The notes under the pieces were generated by a model that made no database searches, was not told the origin of the DNA, and saw only the letters and a list, made by a program, of their open reading frames with translations. This document shows positions 12,773 to 55,153 of a DNA stretch of 64,000 bases, one piece after another. The stretch covers positions 24,862,001-24,926,000 of the forward strand of contig NC_043002.1 in the NCBI RefSeq assembly GCF_006345805.1, read 5' to 3'. A program made the translations under genes and the position numbers. Position 1 is the stretch's first letter. Each line of letters starts with the position of its first letter. Source of the stretch: Octopus sinensis. Lineage: Eukaryota.

Positions 12773-12800
12773 CCGGAAGTAAAGACTAAAGTAAGCGATA
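12773..12800. promoter_or_regulatory. 28-bp promoter module copy 1 (ETS site CCGGAAGT + TAA..GATA)
   Basis: Ungapped alignment with 37299-37326 and 55126-55153; 20 of 28 positions invariant. Confidence 0.75.
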
Positions 12801-13194
12801 ATTACCACATGGCTAAACTAAGTAATAAACAATAACATTTTTGTCAACAATCAACATTGACATGTGAGAGAGACGAAATTTACTTTCCGTTTCAGTTTTT
12901 TTTTTGTCAGAGGGTTGGGGAGAATAGAGACTCTATGTGGTTTCTTGAAATGCTAGAAATAGAGTCAAAATCTTTTCAAATAATATTTCATCGTCTATAA
13001 AAAGCATACTTTGGAAATTAACATTTATGTGTCTGCTAGTATTGGCTTCGGCAGAGGTCTAGAACAGTACGCCCACATAAGTTGAATTTTCTCCGTTTTT
13101 CAATTTTTCTTTTACCACATACTTCGAGATGATAGCGGGAGGGGAAGCTTTTTGTGAAAAAAATTTGGTAAAATTACGATTTTCACAAAAAAAA

Positions 13195-13560
13195 AAAAAA
13201 AACTCGAATTTTTTGCGTGGAATCAAGTACCCTGACCTCCTAATATGCTGCAAATCCCATATTTTAGTCCGGAAGGAGGGGGGTACCCCCGCCCCCGGAA
13301 TTTTCACACACAAAAAAAAAACTCTGAATTTTTGCGTGGAAGCAAGTACCCTGACCTCGTAATATGCTGTAAATCCCATATTTTGGTTCGGAAGGGTGGG
13401 CAGCCCCCACCCCCTGGAATTTTCACTAAGGAAAAATATTTTTTTTAAATTCGGATTTTTTGCGTGGAATCAAGTACTCTGACCTTCTTACCCTAATATG
13501 CTGGAAATCCCTTATTTTGGTTCGGAAAAGGGGGTGGCGAATTGGATTTTTTTTTTTTTT
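13195..13560. repeat. Minisatellite, about 3 x 123-bp units
   Basis: Recurring ttttttgcgtggaatcaagtaccctgacct..taatatgctg.aaatcccatatttt.gt.cggaagg. Confidence 0.85.
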
Positions 13561-13932
13561 TTTCGTTGAATGAATTCCTGTAACATGCTAACATAACCCA
13601 TCCCAACAAGGTAGAAAACCCTAATTGCGGTTCGAAAAATGGAGTGAGGTGGAAGCCTCGGAAGTTTCACCCACTCCCAACATTTTACAGAAATAAAATT
13701 TCCTGGGTGTGAATTACATGGTTCGTTATTAAATATATATAGAAAATGTGTATAATTGGTGTATTCGTGTCTGTGTGTGCGCACACAACAATTTCAATGA
13801 TTTATACGAATAAACAGAAAGTACAGAAATATATGTTCTACATATCTGTTATATATGTCCTTCATTTTCGCATCCGTGAAGTTTTTGAGGATGACGGAAA
13901 AGCTATTTGATGCACCCACTAAAAGATTTGGA

Positions 13933-14083
13933 AATGGGGCTAATGCAAATTCACACCTCCCCTTCAGAAATGTATTTTTCTGAAAAAGTTTATTCTGACA
14001 TATAAAACCTAGGACTCCAAATAAACTTTTTCAGAAAAATGCATTTTGTCTAGGTGAGGTGCAAATCTACATTAGCACCCCTG
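13933..14083. mobile_element. Short hairpin MITE (~150 bp) with imperfect ~60-bp inverted arms
   Basis: ggggctaatgcaaattcacacctc...ttttctgaaaaagtttatt versus aataaactttttcagaaaaa...gaggtgcaaatctacattagcacccctg. Confidence 0.65.
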
Positions 14084-14418
14084 GAATTGCAATTAAGCAA
14101 TTACGACAGGTCAGCAAATGTCGCGTTCTAATTTTTGTTTCTGATCTCTCTCAACACTCTCTCTGCCCTCTCTTTCTCAAAGTTTTACAGCTTCATACCA
14201 GCGTTTTAAGAAAAAATAAAAATAAAAGTTTTCCGCGTCTAAACTAATTTTTGCGTGTGTGGGGGAGAAAGATGAACGATTTAAAATAAATATATCTTAA
14301 TTATAGTGTGAGAAAGTATATATATTCTGATGATAAAATATATTATCTTTCAAAAACATCCCAAATTTTTAGACTATATCGTGTATGTTTAAGAAATGGT
14401 TCATTATATATATATATA

Positions 14419-14745
14419 CTAGCTTAAGGTGACCCGCTCTACGCGCGGATAAGAGTGTGGTTGTTATTTTCTGTTGCATCCTTTCGGCACGTAAAAAGCA
14501 CCATCTGAACGTGGCCGATTGCAGCTCCGCCTTGACTGGCTTCTGTGCCGGTGGCACGTAAAAAGCACATTTTGGTTAATATAACCCGATTTCATTCGGG
14601 TCTACTCGGGTCACATTTTATAAGATGAGGAATTTTGTCCTAGAGGTCACGCCTTTCATTTGAGGAAAAAAATAGTTGCCATGCAAACCCGCCAGCACTA
14701 TTAACATTGGTGTGCATATTTTCAGCACAACCGACCACATAATGC
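14419..14745 (-). mobile_element. Helitron 3' end (CTAG at 14419-14422) carrying an RTE-tail fragment
   Basis: Hairpin ccgcgcgtagagcgg then CTAG|T; 5' end not identified. Confidence 0.55.
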
Positions 14746-51642: not shown

Positions 51643-51654
51643 CTGAAATACAAC
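51643..51654 (-). promoter_or_regulatory. ZNF3 splice acceptor GTTGTATTTCAG|G
   Basis: Conserved in all four ZNF genes. Confidence 0.8.
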
Positions 51655-52535
51655 AAAACTGATATTAAACTATAATATAACTTATTGACAAAGGATGGTC
51701 TTTCTATTTGTTACTCTTCATATATCTGATGGGAAAAAAATTGGTCTCTCACTTCTTCCCTGAAATAATAACAAAAACTGTTTGATAGGTATTTGCTATC
51801 TCAAGAGGGGCAAATACAAAAACTATGGCTACAAACACCAAGGACTCAAACTTCAAGACAAACCATCAATGTCAAATTCAGATAATATGACATCGAAGGA
51901 ACAGTCTGTCTCTTATTTTCATTTAGCATAACAGAGAGTCACTTGAACAATAGAAAGGGAAATGTCTATCTGCTCCTCCAGATGATTTCTTACACTAGTC
52001 TGATCCACCAGATTACTTAAGTCCAGTTTTTACTCCAGATAGTTAGAAAGTCGATATACTGCAGGATCTGAACCCAAAATTGATAGCCTTCCCCCAGCCC
52101 ACCACCTTAAAGATGACACCTCCTTATGAACAAGAGATGCTGGCCTTCAGCTCATGGTATGTCCTCCACAGTTCATAAATGTTTTCTTCCAAGAATATTC
52201 TTCAACACTACATACAGCCCTTGTTGTTTGATACTAACTTGTTTGGTTTCCTTACAAGTAATGATGATATTTGAGGTAAAGACTTATATAAGTGTCTTGG
52301 CAGTTCAGGTCAGTATAAGTGATCCTCTAAAGGAACAGATGGAGGTTTCCCTGTTTTACTAGCGACTACCACTAACACTAAGCGATGATGGAAAGAGAGG
52401 AAAGATGGACCACTTCTTTGATGTCTTATTTGCTGAGATGTTGGAGACAGAAGGGTACCTGAAGTGCCTCAACATACAACTCACTTGAAAGTGTTCATAT
52501 CATCAGTCTTATATCACTTTTCCTCAGAATTCATA

Positions 52536-53498
52536 CTGTAAATCCTCGAGTATAGTCTGCCCTTGAGTATAATACGCAGGACATTTTTAGGGGACTGTAC
52601 CTCTGAAAAACCTAAACCTTGTGTATAATATACACCCCTTCTCTAACTTGAGTCAAGGAGGTCTATATAACGTCCTTGGTTTGTAAAAATGTATACGGTA
52701 ACGTCCTTTATTATTACCTTCTTCCCTTCTTTATCTTTGGTATCTCTTTAATTTCATCTTTATTTCTTCTCCATAACCTGGCATTGCTCTCATCAACATC
52801 AAATTTTCTTCCGGCGGCCCTATTACCATGCTCTTCAGCATATGATATAACTTCAAGTTTAAACATAGCTGGATCTATGAGGCATTTTATGGCATGTAAA
52901 GTATAAAATGTTTTATTAGAGATTAATGTACAGGTTCAAGTCTTGCTTATAAAAAACCCTAGTAAAGACCCACAGTAGTTCAAACATTTAATACTGGTAT
53001 TTAATTAAGTATCTATTGTTTGCCACGGTAATGATGCAAACTGCCAATACAAACAGCAGGATGAACTATTTAGCGCAAAACTATTAAGCACAATTCATGC
53101 ATAATTAGGCCAGCAGTATCTAGTCGAACAAACACTTCCGTGTATGCATAATACAATAATGGTGATGTTCTTAACTGTTATATGGGAATGTAAATATGTT
53201 TGCAAATTGTTTTTGTTACATGTTATTCTGTGTTCTGAATACTTTTATTTTAATAAATGTTGCTTACTGCAAGTTATGGATGATTCTTTTAAGACATCAT
53301 TGCTTTCAGGCTTAGCTTAAGGTATTTTCGCGCCCAACATCACAAAATGCATCTGAATAAACATTGCCAGACAACAAATAGAGACTTGGACATTGCTTAG
53401 AAAATATTTTTCATTTTTAACCTCGTATATAGTACGCACTAGGGATTTGACCTTAAAATTTTGGGGAAAAAATGCGGATTATACTCCAGGATTTACAG
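52536..53498 (-). mobile_element. pogo/Tc2-like non-autonomous DNA transposon (963 bp) in the ZNF3 intron
   Basis: TIRs CTGTAAATCCT(C/G)GAGTATA, TA target duplication, Brinker-type HTH remnant FKLEVISYAEEHGNRAAGRKFDVDESNARLWR. Confidence 0.85.
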
Positions 53499-53693
53499 TA
53501 CTCATTCAGCTTGGTATTGGTATCAAACTTGTGTATGAAGCAGCTGTCAATACCACGGATACATTCATGGGAACTCCTTTCGAGGTTTTAAGGGTGTTCT
53601 CAAACTTCAATGAATAAACGTTTTTAATTCAGTCAGGTGTGGTGACATTTCCAGCTCAGTAAAAGAGAACATTCTAGAATTCAAGCATATCGG

Positions 53694-54003
53694 GAGCTCT
53701 CTGTACCCACCTCAATTTGTTTCCTCATAACTTTCTGAAAAATAGACATTTTTTTGATAAAATTTTCTACAAATATATTTCAGATAATACTGTAGATTAC
53801 GATTATGTCGGAATTTGCCTTTGTTTCTTCATACGTTTTGATGAGGTGCATGAATTATTCACTCCCAATTTTTTTTTTTTTTTCATATCCAAATTCCGAT
53901 ATAATCCGAAGCTACACTATCTGAAACGTATTTGTTGAAGATTTTATTTTAAAATATCCATTTTTCATAAAGTTATGAAGAAACAAAATCGGCAGAGAAG
54001 AGC
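53694..54003. mobile_element. Old MITE with imperfect ~55-bp TIRs
   Basis: tttgtttcctcataactttctgaaaaatagacattt versus the reverse complement tttgtttcttcataactttatgaaaaatggatattt. Confidence 0.6.
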
Positions 54004-55125
54004 ACACACATGTAATAATGCCGGGAGTTGAATCTATCCCTCCTGACTAGAGAGAAAAAAAAAATCAGTTTACTTTTCACAGTGCCACTAAATTAATTGT
54101 CTGTTTATAAGAAACACACTGGTAATGTTTACATCACATTTCAATTTTTTTTTCCAAAGAACCGTTATGTAGTACACTATTGGGCGGAGTTTTGGACAAG
54201 CTTACCCACGTAACTTGGAAGCTCCGCCCACTATTAATTCATGTTGCTGGAGTTTCCCTGACACATGAATTCAGTGAACCTATATTGGTGGTTGCTCGAA
54301 CTGCTAGAAAAAGCAAATAAATCTCCCTCAATCAAACACTACCATCGTTAAAAAAATGAGACACATAATTCTACATAGCTTACATCCGAGAACGGATAAT
54401 TTGAACAGTGACATATATCATAGCAGTAGTTCTCAGATGTTATTACTTTACATCTCACGTACCCAATACATGAGAAAGAGATTGATGACTTATCCAAGGC
54501 ACAACAGTTTGCCTTAGGAAATATCTGCAAACTCTTCTTTCTACATTTAATGCATTTTTGTTCACGTTATTTACAAATGCAATTGCATAACATTTGATGG
54601 ATCCGACTAAAAAGAATTGAAAGACTGAATATGCCGGATAATTCTAGATTTACCGAGACTATTGAAAAAAAAATGAAATCTGTTTGGTTACAGTTAGAAC
54701 TCTTTTGATCATAGGAAGACAGGATCAGGGATTAAACACTAATAGTCTACATTTAACACTTTAGATAAAAGTTACCTTCATCTTCCATTCGTATCTTGAA
54801 TGCTTTGTCGGAATATGTTGAACTTTTTTATATGCAATTCTGTCCGACATTCAGTTCAACTCCTAGTTGTAAGATCTTTAGTGGGAGGGGGTCGTACTCA
54901 ATTGTATTCTACAGGTCCGAAGTTGTTGTTTTAGTTACTTTTCTCCATGTTCCATTGTAAAGTTAATCTCCGTTTCATATATATAAATATAGTGTTGTTG
55001 TTTAGTTAAACAGCAACACACTCCGCAAAGCCATCTTTCTGTGTATCTATATCTGTTGCTATTTGTATACCCTACACTTCACAATACTCTATAGACAATC
55101 AGCACGTGGTTCAGCCAGCATATTA

Positions 55126-55153
55126 CCGGAAGTAAAGGCCTAACTAACGGATA
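55126..55153. promoter_or_regulatory. 28-bp promoter module copy 3
   Basis: CCGGAAGTAAAGGCCTAACTAACGGATA; E-box CACGTG about 20 bp away; candidate donors at 54775 and 54205. Confidence 0.72.

What the first reader, a model, noticed from the sequence alone, without database searches (positions are those of the whole stretch)
12773..55153. Ungapped 28-bp ETS-containing promoter module shared by the ZNF paralogues
Seen: upstream of each of the three ZNF genes whose 5' end is in the window lies a 28-nt block in the same orientation: CCGGAAGTAAAGACTAAAGTAAGCGATA (12773), CCGGAAGTAGAGAACAAACTAACCGATA (37299) and CCGGAAGTAAAGGCCTAACTAACGGATA (55126). 20 of 28 positions are invariant with fixed spacing, while the flanking DNA is otherwise largely unalignable. 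I saw no other CCGGAAGT in the window. Known: CCGGAAGT is the ETS/GABPA site typical of TATA-less promoters, including many mammalian KRAB-ZNF promoters. Inference: this is a composite core-promoter element (ETS plus a fixed-spaced TAA..GATA partner site) that co-regulates the expanded cephalopod ZNF clusters, possibly convergent with mammalian KZNF promoters.
Basis: partly seen in the sequence, partly recalled or inferred. Interest (0 to 1): 0.75.

Follow-up and report, generated by a model that had tools for sequence, protein, structure and literature searches.

The report
Shared upstream motif of octopus zinc-finger genes
Each tandemly duplicated zinc-finger gene in this Octopus sinensis cluster keeps the same ~28-base sequence (an ETS-type GGAAGT site plus a fixed-spaced TTAGTTT..CT box) at its 5' end, most likely an inherited promoter element; a real but ordinary kind of feature.

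Summary
CCGGAAGT occurs only three times in the window, and the three 28-nt blocks share 20/28 positions without gaps. The window is Octopus sinensis chromosome CM016864.1. The four poly-C2H2 genes lie on the minus strand, so the block reads TATCGSTTAGTT..CTYTACTTCCGG in gene sense, 1.0-3.9 kb upstream of each ORF.

One lies 7.5 kb upstream of the fourth ZNF gene, beyond the window end. The other lies 4.1 kb upstream of a ZNF gene in O. bimaculoides, in DNA that blastn otherwise cannot align. About 84 kb of ZNF-free cephalopod DNA has none.

Across all five copies, T3, TTA.TT, CT and ACTTCC stay invariant at fixed spacing. The 'GATA' end and the CCGG flank are not conserved. Every ZNF ORF in the window follows an identical splice acceptor, and two genes share an identical donor downstream of the block. 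The block therefore marks a non-coding first-exon or promoter region.

Best reading: a promoter-proximal element inherited by the paralogues and kept by selection, with an ETS-type site and an unknown partner. Not tested: TSS position, the binding factors, and any generality beyond this cluster. The convergence with mammalian KZNF promoters is unsupported.

The parts
12773..12800 (-). Module copy of ZNF gene Z1. Gene-sense sequence: TATCGCTTACTTTAGTCTTTACTTCCGG.
   Evidence: Identical in the O. vulgaris orthologous locus L002.
37299..37326 (-). Module copy of ZNF gene Z2. Gene-sense sequence: TATCGGTTAGTTTGTTCTCTACTTCCGG.
55126..55153 (-). Module copy of ZNF gene Z3. Gene-sense sequence: TATCCGTTAGTTAGGCCTTTACTTCCGG.
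12344..12361 (-). Conserved splice donor TTGAG|GTAAGATCTCTTT, 416 nt downstream of the Z1 module. It is the inferred end of a non-coding 5' exon.
   Evidence: Exact 18-mer shared with Z2; 0.09 expected by chance.
37106..37123 (-). Conserved splice donor TTGAG|GTAAGATCTCTTT, 180 nt downstream of the Z2 module.
9088..9100 (-). Conserved acceptor TTGTATTTCAG|GA of the ZNF-coding last exon of Z1. The exon starts at 9089, 166 nt before the ATG.
36462..36474 (-). Conserved acceptor TTGTATTTCAG|GA of the last exon of Z2. The exon starts at 36463.
51641..51653 (-). Conserved acceptor TTGTATTTCAG|GA of the last exon of Z3. The exon starts at 51642.
63924..63936 (-). Conserved acceptor TTGTATTTCAG|GA of the last exon of Z4. 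The Z4 module lies outside the window at L004:2533-2560, which is window-equivalent 71192-71219.
7358..8923 (-). Z1 ORF: 521 aa, poly-C2H2 with 17 fingers.
35074..36282 (-). Z2 ORF: 402 aa, 14 C2H2 fingers, no KRAB or SCAN domain.
50709..51419 (-). Z3 ORF: 236 aa, 7 C2H2 fingers.
62954..63751 (-). Z4 ORF: 265 aa, 8 C2H2 fingers.

Best explanation
The block is a promoter-proximal cis-regulatory element. It was inherited from the ancestral gene unit of this tandem poly-C2H2 zinc-finger family and has been kept by purifying selection.

The constrained part is about 20 nt. In gene sense it reads TTA(G/C)TT(T/A)(A/G)(G/T)(T/C)CT-NN-ACTTCC. That is an ETS-type site (GGAAGT on the opposite strand) with a second box, TTAGTTT..CT, at an invariant distance.

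Inferred mechanism: an ETS-family activator and an unidentified partner, or one long-footprint factor, bind here. They drive transcription that starts at or within roughly 100 nt downstream. This produces a non-coding first exon that is spliced, through an intron of 0.65 to about 7 kb, to the single ZNF-coding exon.

Shown: the conservation, the orientation, the position upstream of conserved splice signals, and the absence of the block elsewhere. Inferred: protein binding, which factors bind, and where the TSS lies.
For: 1. Three in-window copies share 20/28 positions, with 0.00 chance matches expected.
2. Out-of-sample test 1. A PWM built from the three copies finds one outlier in the 10 kb upstream of the fourth ZNF ORF. 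It is at L004:2533, in sense orientation, and scores 19.3. The next best score there is -0.6 and the background maximum in the 64-kb window is 11.8.
3. Out-of-sample test 2. In the O. bimaculoides locus, reached through the neighbouring galactosyltransferase gene, there is one outlier (score 22.5, next 2.6). It is on the expected strand, about 4.1 kb upstream of a ZNF ORF. blastn aligned no non-coding DNA around the module at that locus.
4. In a simulated null, none of 1500 random 10-kb sequences reached 19.3.
5. Four ZNF-free loci totalling 84 kb (L007-L010), and the rest of the window, have no copy.
6. The paralogues are old: 45-49% aa and 66-70% nt identity in the coding sequence. The module is 68-82% identical, and its 20-nt core 80-90%.
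7. In a five-way block search, only the module exceeded the shuffled controls.
8. An exact acceptor, TTGTATTTCAG|GA, precedes all four ORFs. An exact donor, TTGAG|GTAAGATCTCTTT, lies 180 nt (Z2) and 416 nt (Z1) downstream of the module, and a similar donor lies downstream of the Z4 copy. The module is therefore the 5'-most conserved block of a spliced 5' leader.
9. The substitutions in the ETS part (CCGGAAGT, GAGGAAGT, CAGGAAGT) fall only at positions that ETS proteins tolerate (my own knowledge of the ETS consensus). ETS/ELF sites cluster within 60 nt of TSSs (PMC5358759).
Against: - No TSS, expression or chromatin data could be consulted.
- The distance from the module to the first strong donor varies from 115 to 709 nt. 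The exon structure is not fixed and is unresolved for Z3.
- Only five independent copies, from one cluster and its counterpart in a second species, were examined.
- The TTAGTTT..CT box matches no factor I could name.
- AT-rich TATA-like sequences lie 40-100 nt downstream of the module. The true TSS could therefore be further downstream, which would make this an upstream promoter element rather than a core element.
- The local rise in CpG observed/expected is weak and noisy.
Confidence: 0.6

Rival explanations
1. The block is the recognition site of a single long-footprint DNA-binding protein, for example a multi-finger C2H2 protein that could be encoded by this family itself. It would act as a boundary, a promoter-choice element or an autoregulatory element for each tandem unit. 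This is analogous to the conserved sequence element in each protocadherin alternative promoter. It would not be an ETS-plus-partner composite.
For: The constrained region is about 20 nt and has strictly fixed internal spacing in 5/5 copies. That is typical of multi-finger recognition. There is one copy per gene unit, always in the same orientation.
Against: The most invariant segment is exactly GGAAGT, and the variation beside it follows ETS tolerance. The sequence has no resemblance to the CTCF motif (my own knowledge). There are no binding data.
Confidence: 0.12
2. The block lies inside the transcribed 5' UTR, at or just after the TSS. Its conservation would then reflect an RNA-level function, such as translation control or protein binding to the leader, rather than DNA binding.
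For: It is followed by conserved donor sites, so nearby sequence is probably exonic. Zebrafish chr4 znf genes have highly conserved transcript 5' ends (PMC6370886). Z1-Z3 have short upstream ATG-containing blocks (AGATGG...GTGTTGTTG) 80-125 nt downstream.
Against: The downstream leader sequence is poorly conserved, and the uATG blocks are not significant. The invariant hexamer is a textbook DNA-binding core. I did not test for RNA structure; Rfam finds nothing in the window.
Confidence: 0.15
3. The block is a fragment of an interspersed repeat or transposable element. It happens to sit near these genes and has no regulatory role.
For: The region is TE-rich: reverse-transcriptase and Pif1-helicase fragments and a 200-240-nt interspersed repeat near or inside the 5' regions.
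Against: About 179 kb of distinct cephalopod sequence contains five copies. All five are sense-oriented and upstream of ZNF ORFs, and none occurs in the 84 kb of ZNF-free loci. Similarity ends within tens of nucleotides of the block. No terminal repeats or target-site duplications flank it. It is more conserved than the coding sequence of the paralogues.
Confidence: 0.05
4. The similarity is a chance resemblance, or simply residual homology from recent duplication without selection.
For: The genes are tandem paralogues, so some shared ancestry of the upstream DNA is expected.
Against: Shuffles give 0.00 expected matches. The simulated null never reaches the scores of the out-of-sample copies. 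The surrounding non-coding DNA is at background identity, while the coding sequence is only 66-70% identical. The copy in O. bimaculoides sits in DNA that blastn does not align.
Confidence: 0.02

Closest known systems
ETS-binding sites in TSS-proximal promoters (GABPA/ELK/ELF class, consensus (C/A)(C/A)GGAAGT)
   Same: The GGAAGT core is invariant in all five copies. The flanking substitutions stay within ETS-tolerated bases. The block lies at the 5' end of the genes. Such sites are known to concentrate within 60 nt of TSSs (PMC5358759) and to form fixed-distance composites with second sites (PMC3464117).
   Different: No binding or TSS data exist here. The partner box TTAGTTT..CT is not one of the described ETS composite partners (ETS-ETS, ETS-CRE). 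The organism is a cephalopod, whose ETS specificities have not been measured.
Shared promoters and conserved 5' ends of the zebrafish chromosome-4 znf gene expansion
   Same: A lineage-specific, tandemly expanded poly-ZF family whose members keep a conserved 5' end and promoter architecture, which allows coordinated expression (PMC6370886; summarised in PMC10547256).
   Different: The zebrafish 'sharp peak' promoters are defined by a TATA box and CAGE-mapped TSSs, and their conserved 5' UTRs are long. Here only about 20-28 nt are conserved and nothing is mapped. The two families are independent expansions.
Conserved sequence element (CSE) of clustered protocadherin alternative promoters (my own knowledge)
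   Same: One short conserved element (about 20 nt) lies upstream of every unit of a tandem array, always in the same orientation.
   Different: The Pcdh CSE is a CTCF site used for stochastic promoter choice by looping to a shared enhancer. The octopus block does not resemble a CTCF motif, and each ZNF gene is a complete gene rather than an alternative first exon.
Mammalian KRAB-ZNF gene promoters
   Same: Both are promoters of clustered, rapidly duplicating C2H2 genes.
   Different: The octopus proteins have no KRAB domain. My literature searches found no source stating that the ETS site is characteristic of KZNF promoters in particular. The claimed convergence is untested.

Membership tests
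ETS-binding site | GGA(A/T) core, with GGAAGT preferred, present in every copy | tested here: met
   ACTTCC (the reverse complement of GGAAGT) is invariant in 5/5 independent copies.
ETS-binding site | Variation confined to the two 5' flank positions, using bases that ETS proteins accept (C/A) | tested here: met
   The copies read CCGGAAGT (three times), GAGGAAGT and CAGGAAGT. The tolerance rule comes from my own knowledge of ETS consensus classes.
ETS-binding site | Bound by an ETS-domain protein | not testable with these tools
   No ChIP, DAP-seq or EMSA data are available.
GATA-factor site (WGATAR) | Match to (A/T)GATA(A/G) | tested here: not met
   The + strand reads CGATAA, CGATAA and GGATAT. 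This end is replaced in the fourth copy (TCTTGG in gene sense) and in the O. bimaculoides copy (CATAGA).
Core promoter element (overlapping or within a few tens of nt of the TSS) | Experimentally mapped TSS adjacent to the element | not testable with these tools
   No CAGE, Iso-Seq or RNA-seq data are accessible. The gene calls in the collection contain the CDS only.
Core promoter element (overlapping or within a few tens of nt of the TSS) | Lies upstream of the first exon's splice donor, with no conserved block further upstream | tested here: met
   Donors lie 115-709 nt downstream. The module is the 5'-most and the only five-way significant block. The variable distance leaves the exact exon structure inconclusive.
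Family-wide promoter element of the cephalopod ZNF expansions | Enriched upstream of ZNF genes genome-wide and in other clusters | not testable with these tools
   Only one cluster and its O. bimaculoides counterpart were reachable. All 5 of 5 ZNF genes with upstream sequence have a copy, and the 84 kb of control DNA has 0. Protein searches meant to fetch other ZNF loci failed.
High-copy transposable element fragment | Many dispersed copies in either orientation, with longer flanking homology or terminal repeats | tested here: not met
   About 179 kb has no copies outside ZNF 5' regions. Homology is limited to 93 nt at most. There are no flanking terminal repeats. The sample is small compared with a genome of roughly 2.7 Gb (size from my own knowledge).
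Protocadherin-CSE-like CTCF site | One oriented conserved element per tandem unit | tested here: met
   one copy per gene, all in sense orientation.
Protocadherin-CSE-like CTCF site | Matches the CTCF motif and is bound by CTCF | not tested
   By eye, the AT-rich TTAGTTT..ACTTCC has no resemblance to CCASYAGRKGGCRSY (my own knowledge). No scan or binding data.

The most novel reading that the evidence does not exclude
The 20-28-nt block would be a dedicated recognition site with strictly fixed spacing, used across the octopus poly-ZF expansions. A long-footprint factor would read it, possibly a member of the ZNF family itself. That would give the clusters a shared autoregulatory, cross-regulatory or promoter-choice circuit comparable to the protocadherin CSE system.
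Probability: 0.1. Interest if true: 0.7.

Novelty: new member of a known kind. Interest (0 to 1): 0.35.

Why it matters
Octopus genomes carry a very large lineage-specific expansion of C2H2 zinc-finger genes. How these genes are regulated is essentially unknown.

A short, testable cis-element that marks the 5' ends of at least one cluster, and that survives between O. sinensis and O. bimaculoides in DNA that blastn otherwise does not align, is useful in three ways:
- It helps annotate the unannotated 5' exons and promoters of these genes.
- It gives a motif for a genome-wide enrichment test.
- It gives a concrete sequence for reporter or DAP-seq experiments.

By itself it is what one expects of paralogous genes, namely a conserved promoter motif with a common ETS core, so it is useful rather than surprising.

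Tried and rejected
1. I searched the protein collection with the 402-aa ZNF to fetch other octopus ZNF loci. The result was swamped by long vertebrate and insect ZNFs. No cephalopod hit appeared, not even the protein itself.

2. I repeated the search with generic 5-mers X-masked. This gave 21 candidates and one irrelevant hit. Other ZNF clusters therefore could not be reached.

3. The neighbour-gene route worked. Homologues of the galactosyltransferase gave an O. bimaculoides locus that contains a module copy. They also gave four ZNF-free loci that served as controls.

4. A metagenome scan with the core pattern returned 32 unrelated, mostly microbial contigs. None has C2H2 fingers or an extended match, which is consistent with chance.

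5. O. vulgaris is 98-99% identical to O. sinensis at this locus, so it has no footprinting power.

6. I looked for further conserved blocks: a TATA-like TTGGGTATTTAA, and an AGATGG..GTGTTGTTG upstream-ATG block. They are visible by eye but not significant in a five-way search against shuffles.

7. CpG observed/expected around the modules is noisy and inconclusive.

8. Rfam, tRNA and tandem-repeat scans of the window found nothing related to the block.

9. I rejected the idea that the module is the galactosyltransferase promoter. The 92%-identical paralogue has no copy within 10 kb, and three of the five modules have no such neighbour.

10. The octopus genome paper (PMC4795812) is not held in the library.

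
Full report
**Where the window comes from.** Exact-protein look-ups place the window on Octopus sinensis chromosome CM016864.1 at about 24,862,001-24,926,000 (GCA_006345805.1). An identical Z1 protein is encoded in O. vulgaris. The window holds four poly-C2H2 ORFs, all on the minus strand:
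- Z1, 7358-8923 (521 aa)
- Z2, 35074-36282 (402 aa)
- Z3, 50709-51419 (236 aa)
- Z4, 62954-63751 (265 aa)

No other C2H2 arrays are present. Pfam finds only C2H2-type finger families in Z2, and no KRAB or SCAN domain.

**Checking the observation.**
- CCGGAAGT occurs exactly three times, at 12773, 37299 and 55126 on the + strand, against 0.45 expected.
- A degenerate 28-mer recovers only these three sites, with none expected in shuffles.
- An anchored, ungapped comparison shows 20/28 invariant columns. The 300 nt on either side are at background identity.
- The genes are on the minus strand. In gene sense the block reads TATCGCTTACTTTAGTCTTTACTTCCGG (Z1), TATCGGTTAGTTTGTTCTCTACTTCCGG (Z2) and TATCCGTTAGTTAGGCCTTTACTTCCGG (Z3).
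- The blocks lie 3.85, 1.0 and 3.7 kb upstream of the respective ATGs.

1. The 10 kb upstream of Z4 lies beyond the window end (locus L004). It has one outlier, TCTTGGTTAGTTTGGTCTGGACTTCCTC, at L004:2533-2560 (window-equivalent 71192-71219). It is in sense orientation and scores 19.3. The next best score there is -0.6, and the background maximum across both strands of the whole window is 11.8.

2. Searching with ZNF proteins was useless, so I reached another species through the neighbouring beta-1,3-galactosyltransferase gene (window 17913-19004, +). Its O. bimaculoides homologue (P0122, 72% aa identity) gave locus L006. That locus has a single outlier, CATAGATTAGTTTAGTCTGTACTTCCTG, scoring 22.5 (next 2.6). 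It lies on the strand predicted by synteny, about 5 kb from the galactosyltransferase and about 4.1 kb upstream of a ZNF ORF. blastn between the two species aligns the galactosyltransferase coding region (82%) and the ZNF arrays (about 60-64%). It aligns no non-coding DNA around the module.

3. In 1500 simulated 10-kb sequences (first-order Markov model of the window), the maximum score never reached 19.3.

4. Four cephalopod loci without C2H2 ORFs contain no copy. They are L007 (O. sinensis), L008 and L009 (ENA assembly ERZ21867824) and L010 (O. vulgaris, another chromosome), 84 kb in total. Their maximum is 10.4 with the 3-copy PWM and 12.4 with a 5-copy PWM.

In all, about 179 kb of distinct sequence holds five independent copies. 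Every one is sense-oriented and upstream of a ZNF ORF, and every ZNF ORF whose upstream region I could read has one.

**What is actually conserved.** Across the five copies, 14 of 28 positions are invariant: T3, TTA (7-9), TT (11-12), CT (17-18) and ACTTCC (21-26). No insertions or deletions occur between them.
- Pairwise identity is 68-82% over 28 nt and 80-90% over the 20-nt core.
- The paralogous coding sequences are only 66-70% identical at nucleotide level and 45-49% at protein level.
- An exhaustive five-way search for 14-nt blocks from -200 to +500 found only the two halves of the module above the shuffled controls, and at collinear positions.
It never matched WGATAR even in the original three.
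- CCGG becomes GAGG and CAGG.

The element is therefore better described as TTA(G/C)TT..CT-NN-ACTTCC. GGAAGT with C/A-type flanks is the ETS-family consensus (my own knowledge). The pattern of an invariant GGAAGT with variable but permitted flanks is what selection for ETS binding would produce. I could not match the TTAGTTT..CT box to a known factor.

**Gene architecture around the block.**
- Every ZNF ORF in the window is preceded, 166-225 nt before its ATG, by the exact sequence TTGTATTTCAG|GA. It occurs four times exactly, all on the minus strand, at 9088-9100, 36462-36474, 51641-51653 and 63924-63936. Allowing one mismatch gives five matches, against 0.28 expected. The ZNF array is therefore the last exon of a spliced transcript with a non-coding leader.
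- Z1 and Z2 share an exact 18-nt donor, TTGAG|GTAAGATCTCTTT, 416 and 180 nt downstream of their modules.
- Z4 has GTTGAG|GTAAGATAGC at +709, and O. bimaculoides has AAG|GTAAAG at +115.
- For Z2 this gives a compact model: a start near 37298, exon 1 ending at 37119, a 655-nt intron, and a last exon from 36463.
- The long Z4 interval contains reverse-transcriptase fragments, which explains the 7.5-kb distance.
- Nothing upstream of the module is conserved apart from about 25 nt between Z2 and Z4.

The module is therefore the 5'-most conserved feature of each transcription unit. That is where a promoter-proximal element would sit. The O. bimaculoides gene lacks the TTGTATTTCAGGA acceptor but keeps the module, so the module is the more deeply conserved feature.

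**Interpretation.** The most likely reading (about 0.6) is a promoter-proximal element inherited by all members of this tandem family and held by purifying selection. It would be bound by an ETS-type activator together with an unknown partner at fixed spacing.

I cannot say whether it overlaps the TSS. No transcript or chromatin data were accessible, and donor distances vary. AT-rich TATA-like sequences 40-100 nt downstream leave open a TSS further downstream; these blocks are not statistically supported.

Rivals:
- A single long-footprint factor site with boundary, choice or autoregulatory function (0.12).
- An RNA-level 5' UTR element (0.15).
- A TE fragment (0.05).
- Chance or neutral residue of duplication (0.02).

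The TE idea is disfavoured for three reasons. Every copy is in the same place and orientation. The controls have none. There are no terminal repeats and no long flanking homology. The sample is small relative to the genome, however.

**Comparison with what is known.**
- ETS sites close to TSSs, and fixed-distance ETS composites, are well described in mammals (PMC5358759, PMC3464117).
- Independently expanded ZNF families with shared promoter architecture and conserved 5' ends are known from zebrafish chromosome 4 (PMC6370886; PMC10547256).
- The one-oriented-element-per-unit layout recalls the protocadherin CSE (my own knowledge).
- I found no paper describing a promoter motif for octopus ZNF genes, and none supporting an ETS signature specific to mammalian KZNF promoters.

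The finding is a new member of a familiar kind: a family-specific conserved promoter motif.

**Verdict.** The feature is real, statistically solid and evolutionarily constrained. It is wrong about the GATA half and goes beyond the evidence on generality. Interest is moderate to low (0.35).

Noticed in passing
window 17913-19004 (+); L007:10861-11952: A beta-1,3-galactosyltransferase gene (Pfam Galactosyl_T) sits inside the ZNF cluster, divergent from Z1. A 92%-identical paralogue lies about 50 kb beyond the window end on the opposite strand. An O. bimaculoides homologue keeps the same position next to a ZNF gene.
   Followed up: partly
window 20000-22300 (+) and 25218-25739 (-): A GC-rich stretch (GC 0.50) carries a reverse-transcriptase fragment (RVT_1). 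Separately there is a Pif1-helicase 2B-domain fragment, which looks Helitron-like. These are TE remnants lying between Z1 and Z2.
   Followed up: partly
window ~10936-11167 (Z1 intron), ~37527-37728 (upstream of the Z2 module); L004 ~8500-8870 (Z4 intron): A 200-240-nt interspersed repeat, 65-75% identical between copies, occurs in or near three of the ZNF 5' regions. It is distinct from the module.
   Followed up: no
window 37707-37719: An exact 13-nt copy of the middle of the Z2 module (GTAGAGAACAAAC) lies about 400 nt further upstream in gene sense. It lacks the GGAAGT and TAAC parts. It is probably chance or a micro-duplication.
   Followed up: partly
window ~12685-12700, ~37165-37185, ~55010-55040 (minus strand): A short block, AGATGG...GTGTTG(T/C)TGTTT, with an upstream ATG in good Kozak-like context lies 80-125 nt downstream of the modules of Z1-Z3. 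It would encode 10-14-codon uORFs with a shared V-L-L-F-like peptide. It is not significant in the five-way test.
   Followed up: partly
window 29570-29731 and 58484-58634: Two GC-rich tandem arrays of 61-63-nt units appear related to each other in opposite orientation (GGTGCTTTTACGTGCCACC / GGTGGCACGTAAAATGCACC). They may belong to a dispersed repeat family.
   Followed up: no
window 13193-13426: A 119-nt unit is duplicated in tandem at 88% identity, about 400 nt upstream (gene sense) of the Z1 module.
   Followed up: no
window 50075-50509 (-): A 144-aa ORF lies directly downstream of the short Z3 ORF and has no Pfam match. Z3 has only 7 fingers, with a disrupted spacing between fingers 2 and 3, so it may be a decaying copy.
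   Followed up: no
tool behaviour: The word-indexed protein search does not return the window's own poly-ZF proteins or any cephalopod ZNF, even though exact look-up finds them. Poly-ZF queries are therefore effectively unsearchable with that tool.
   Followed up: yes
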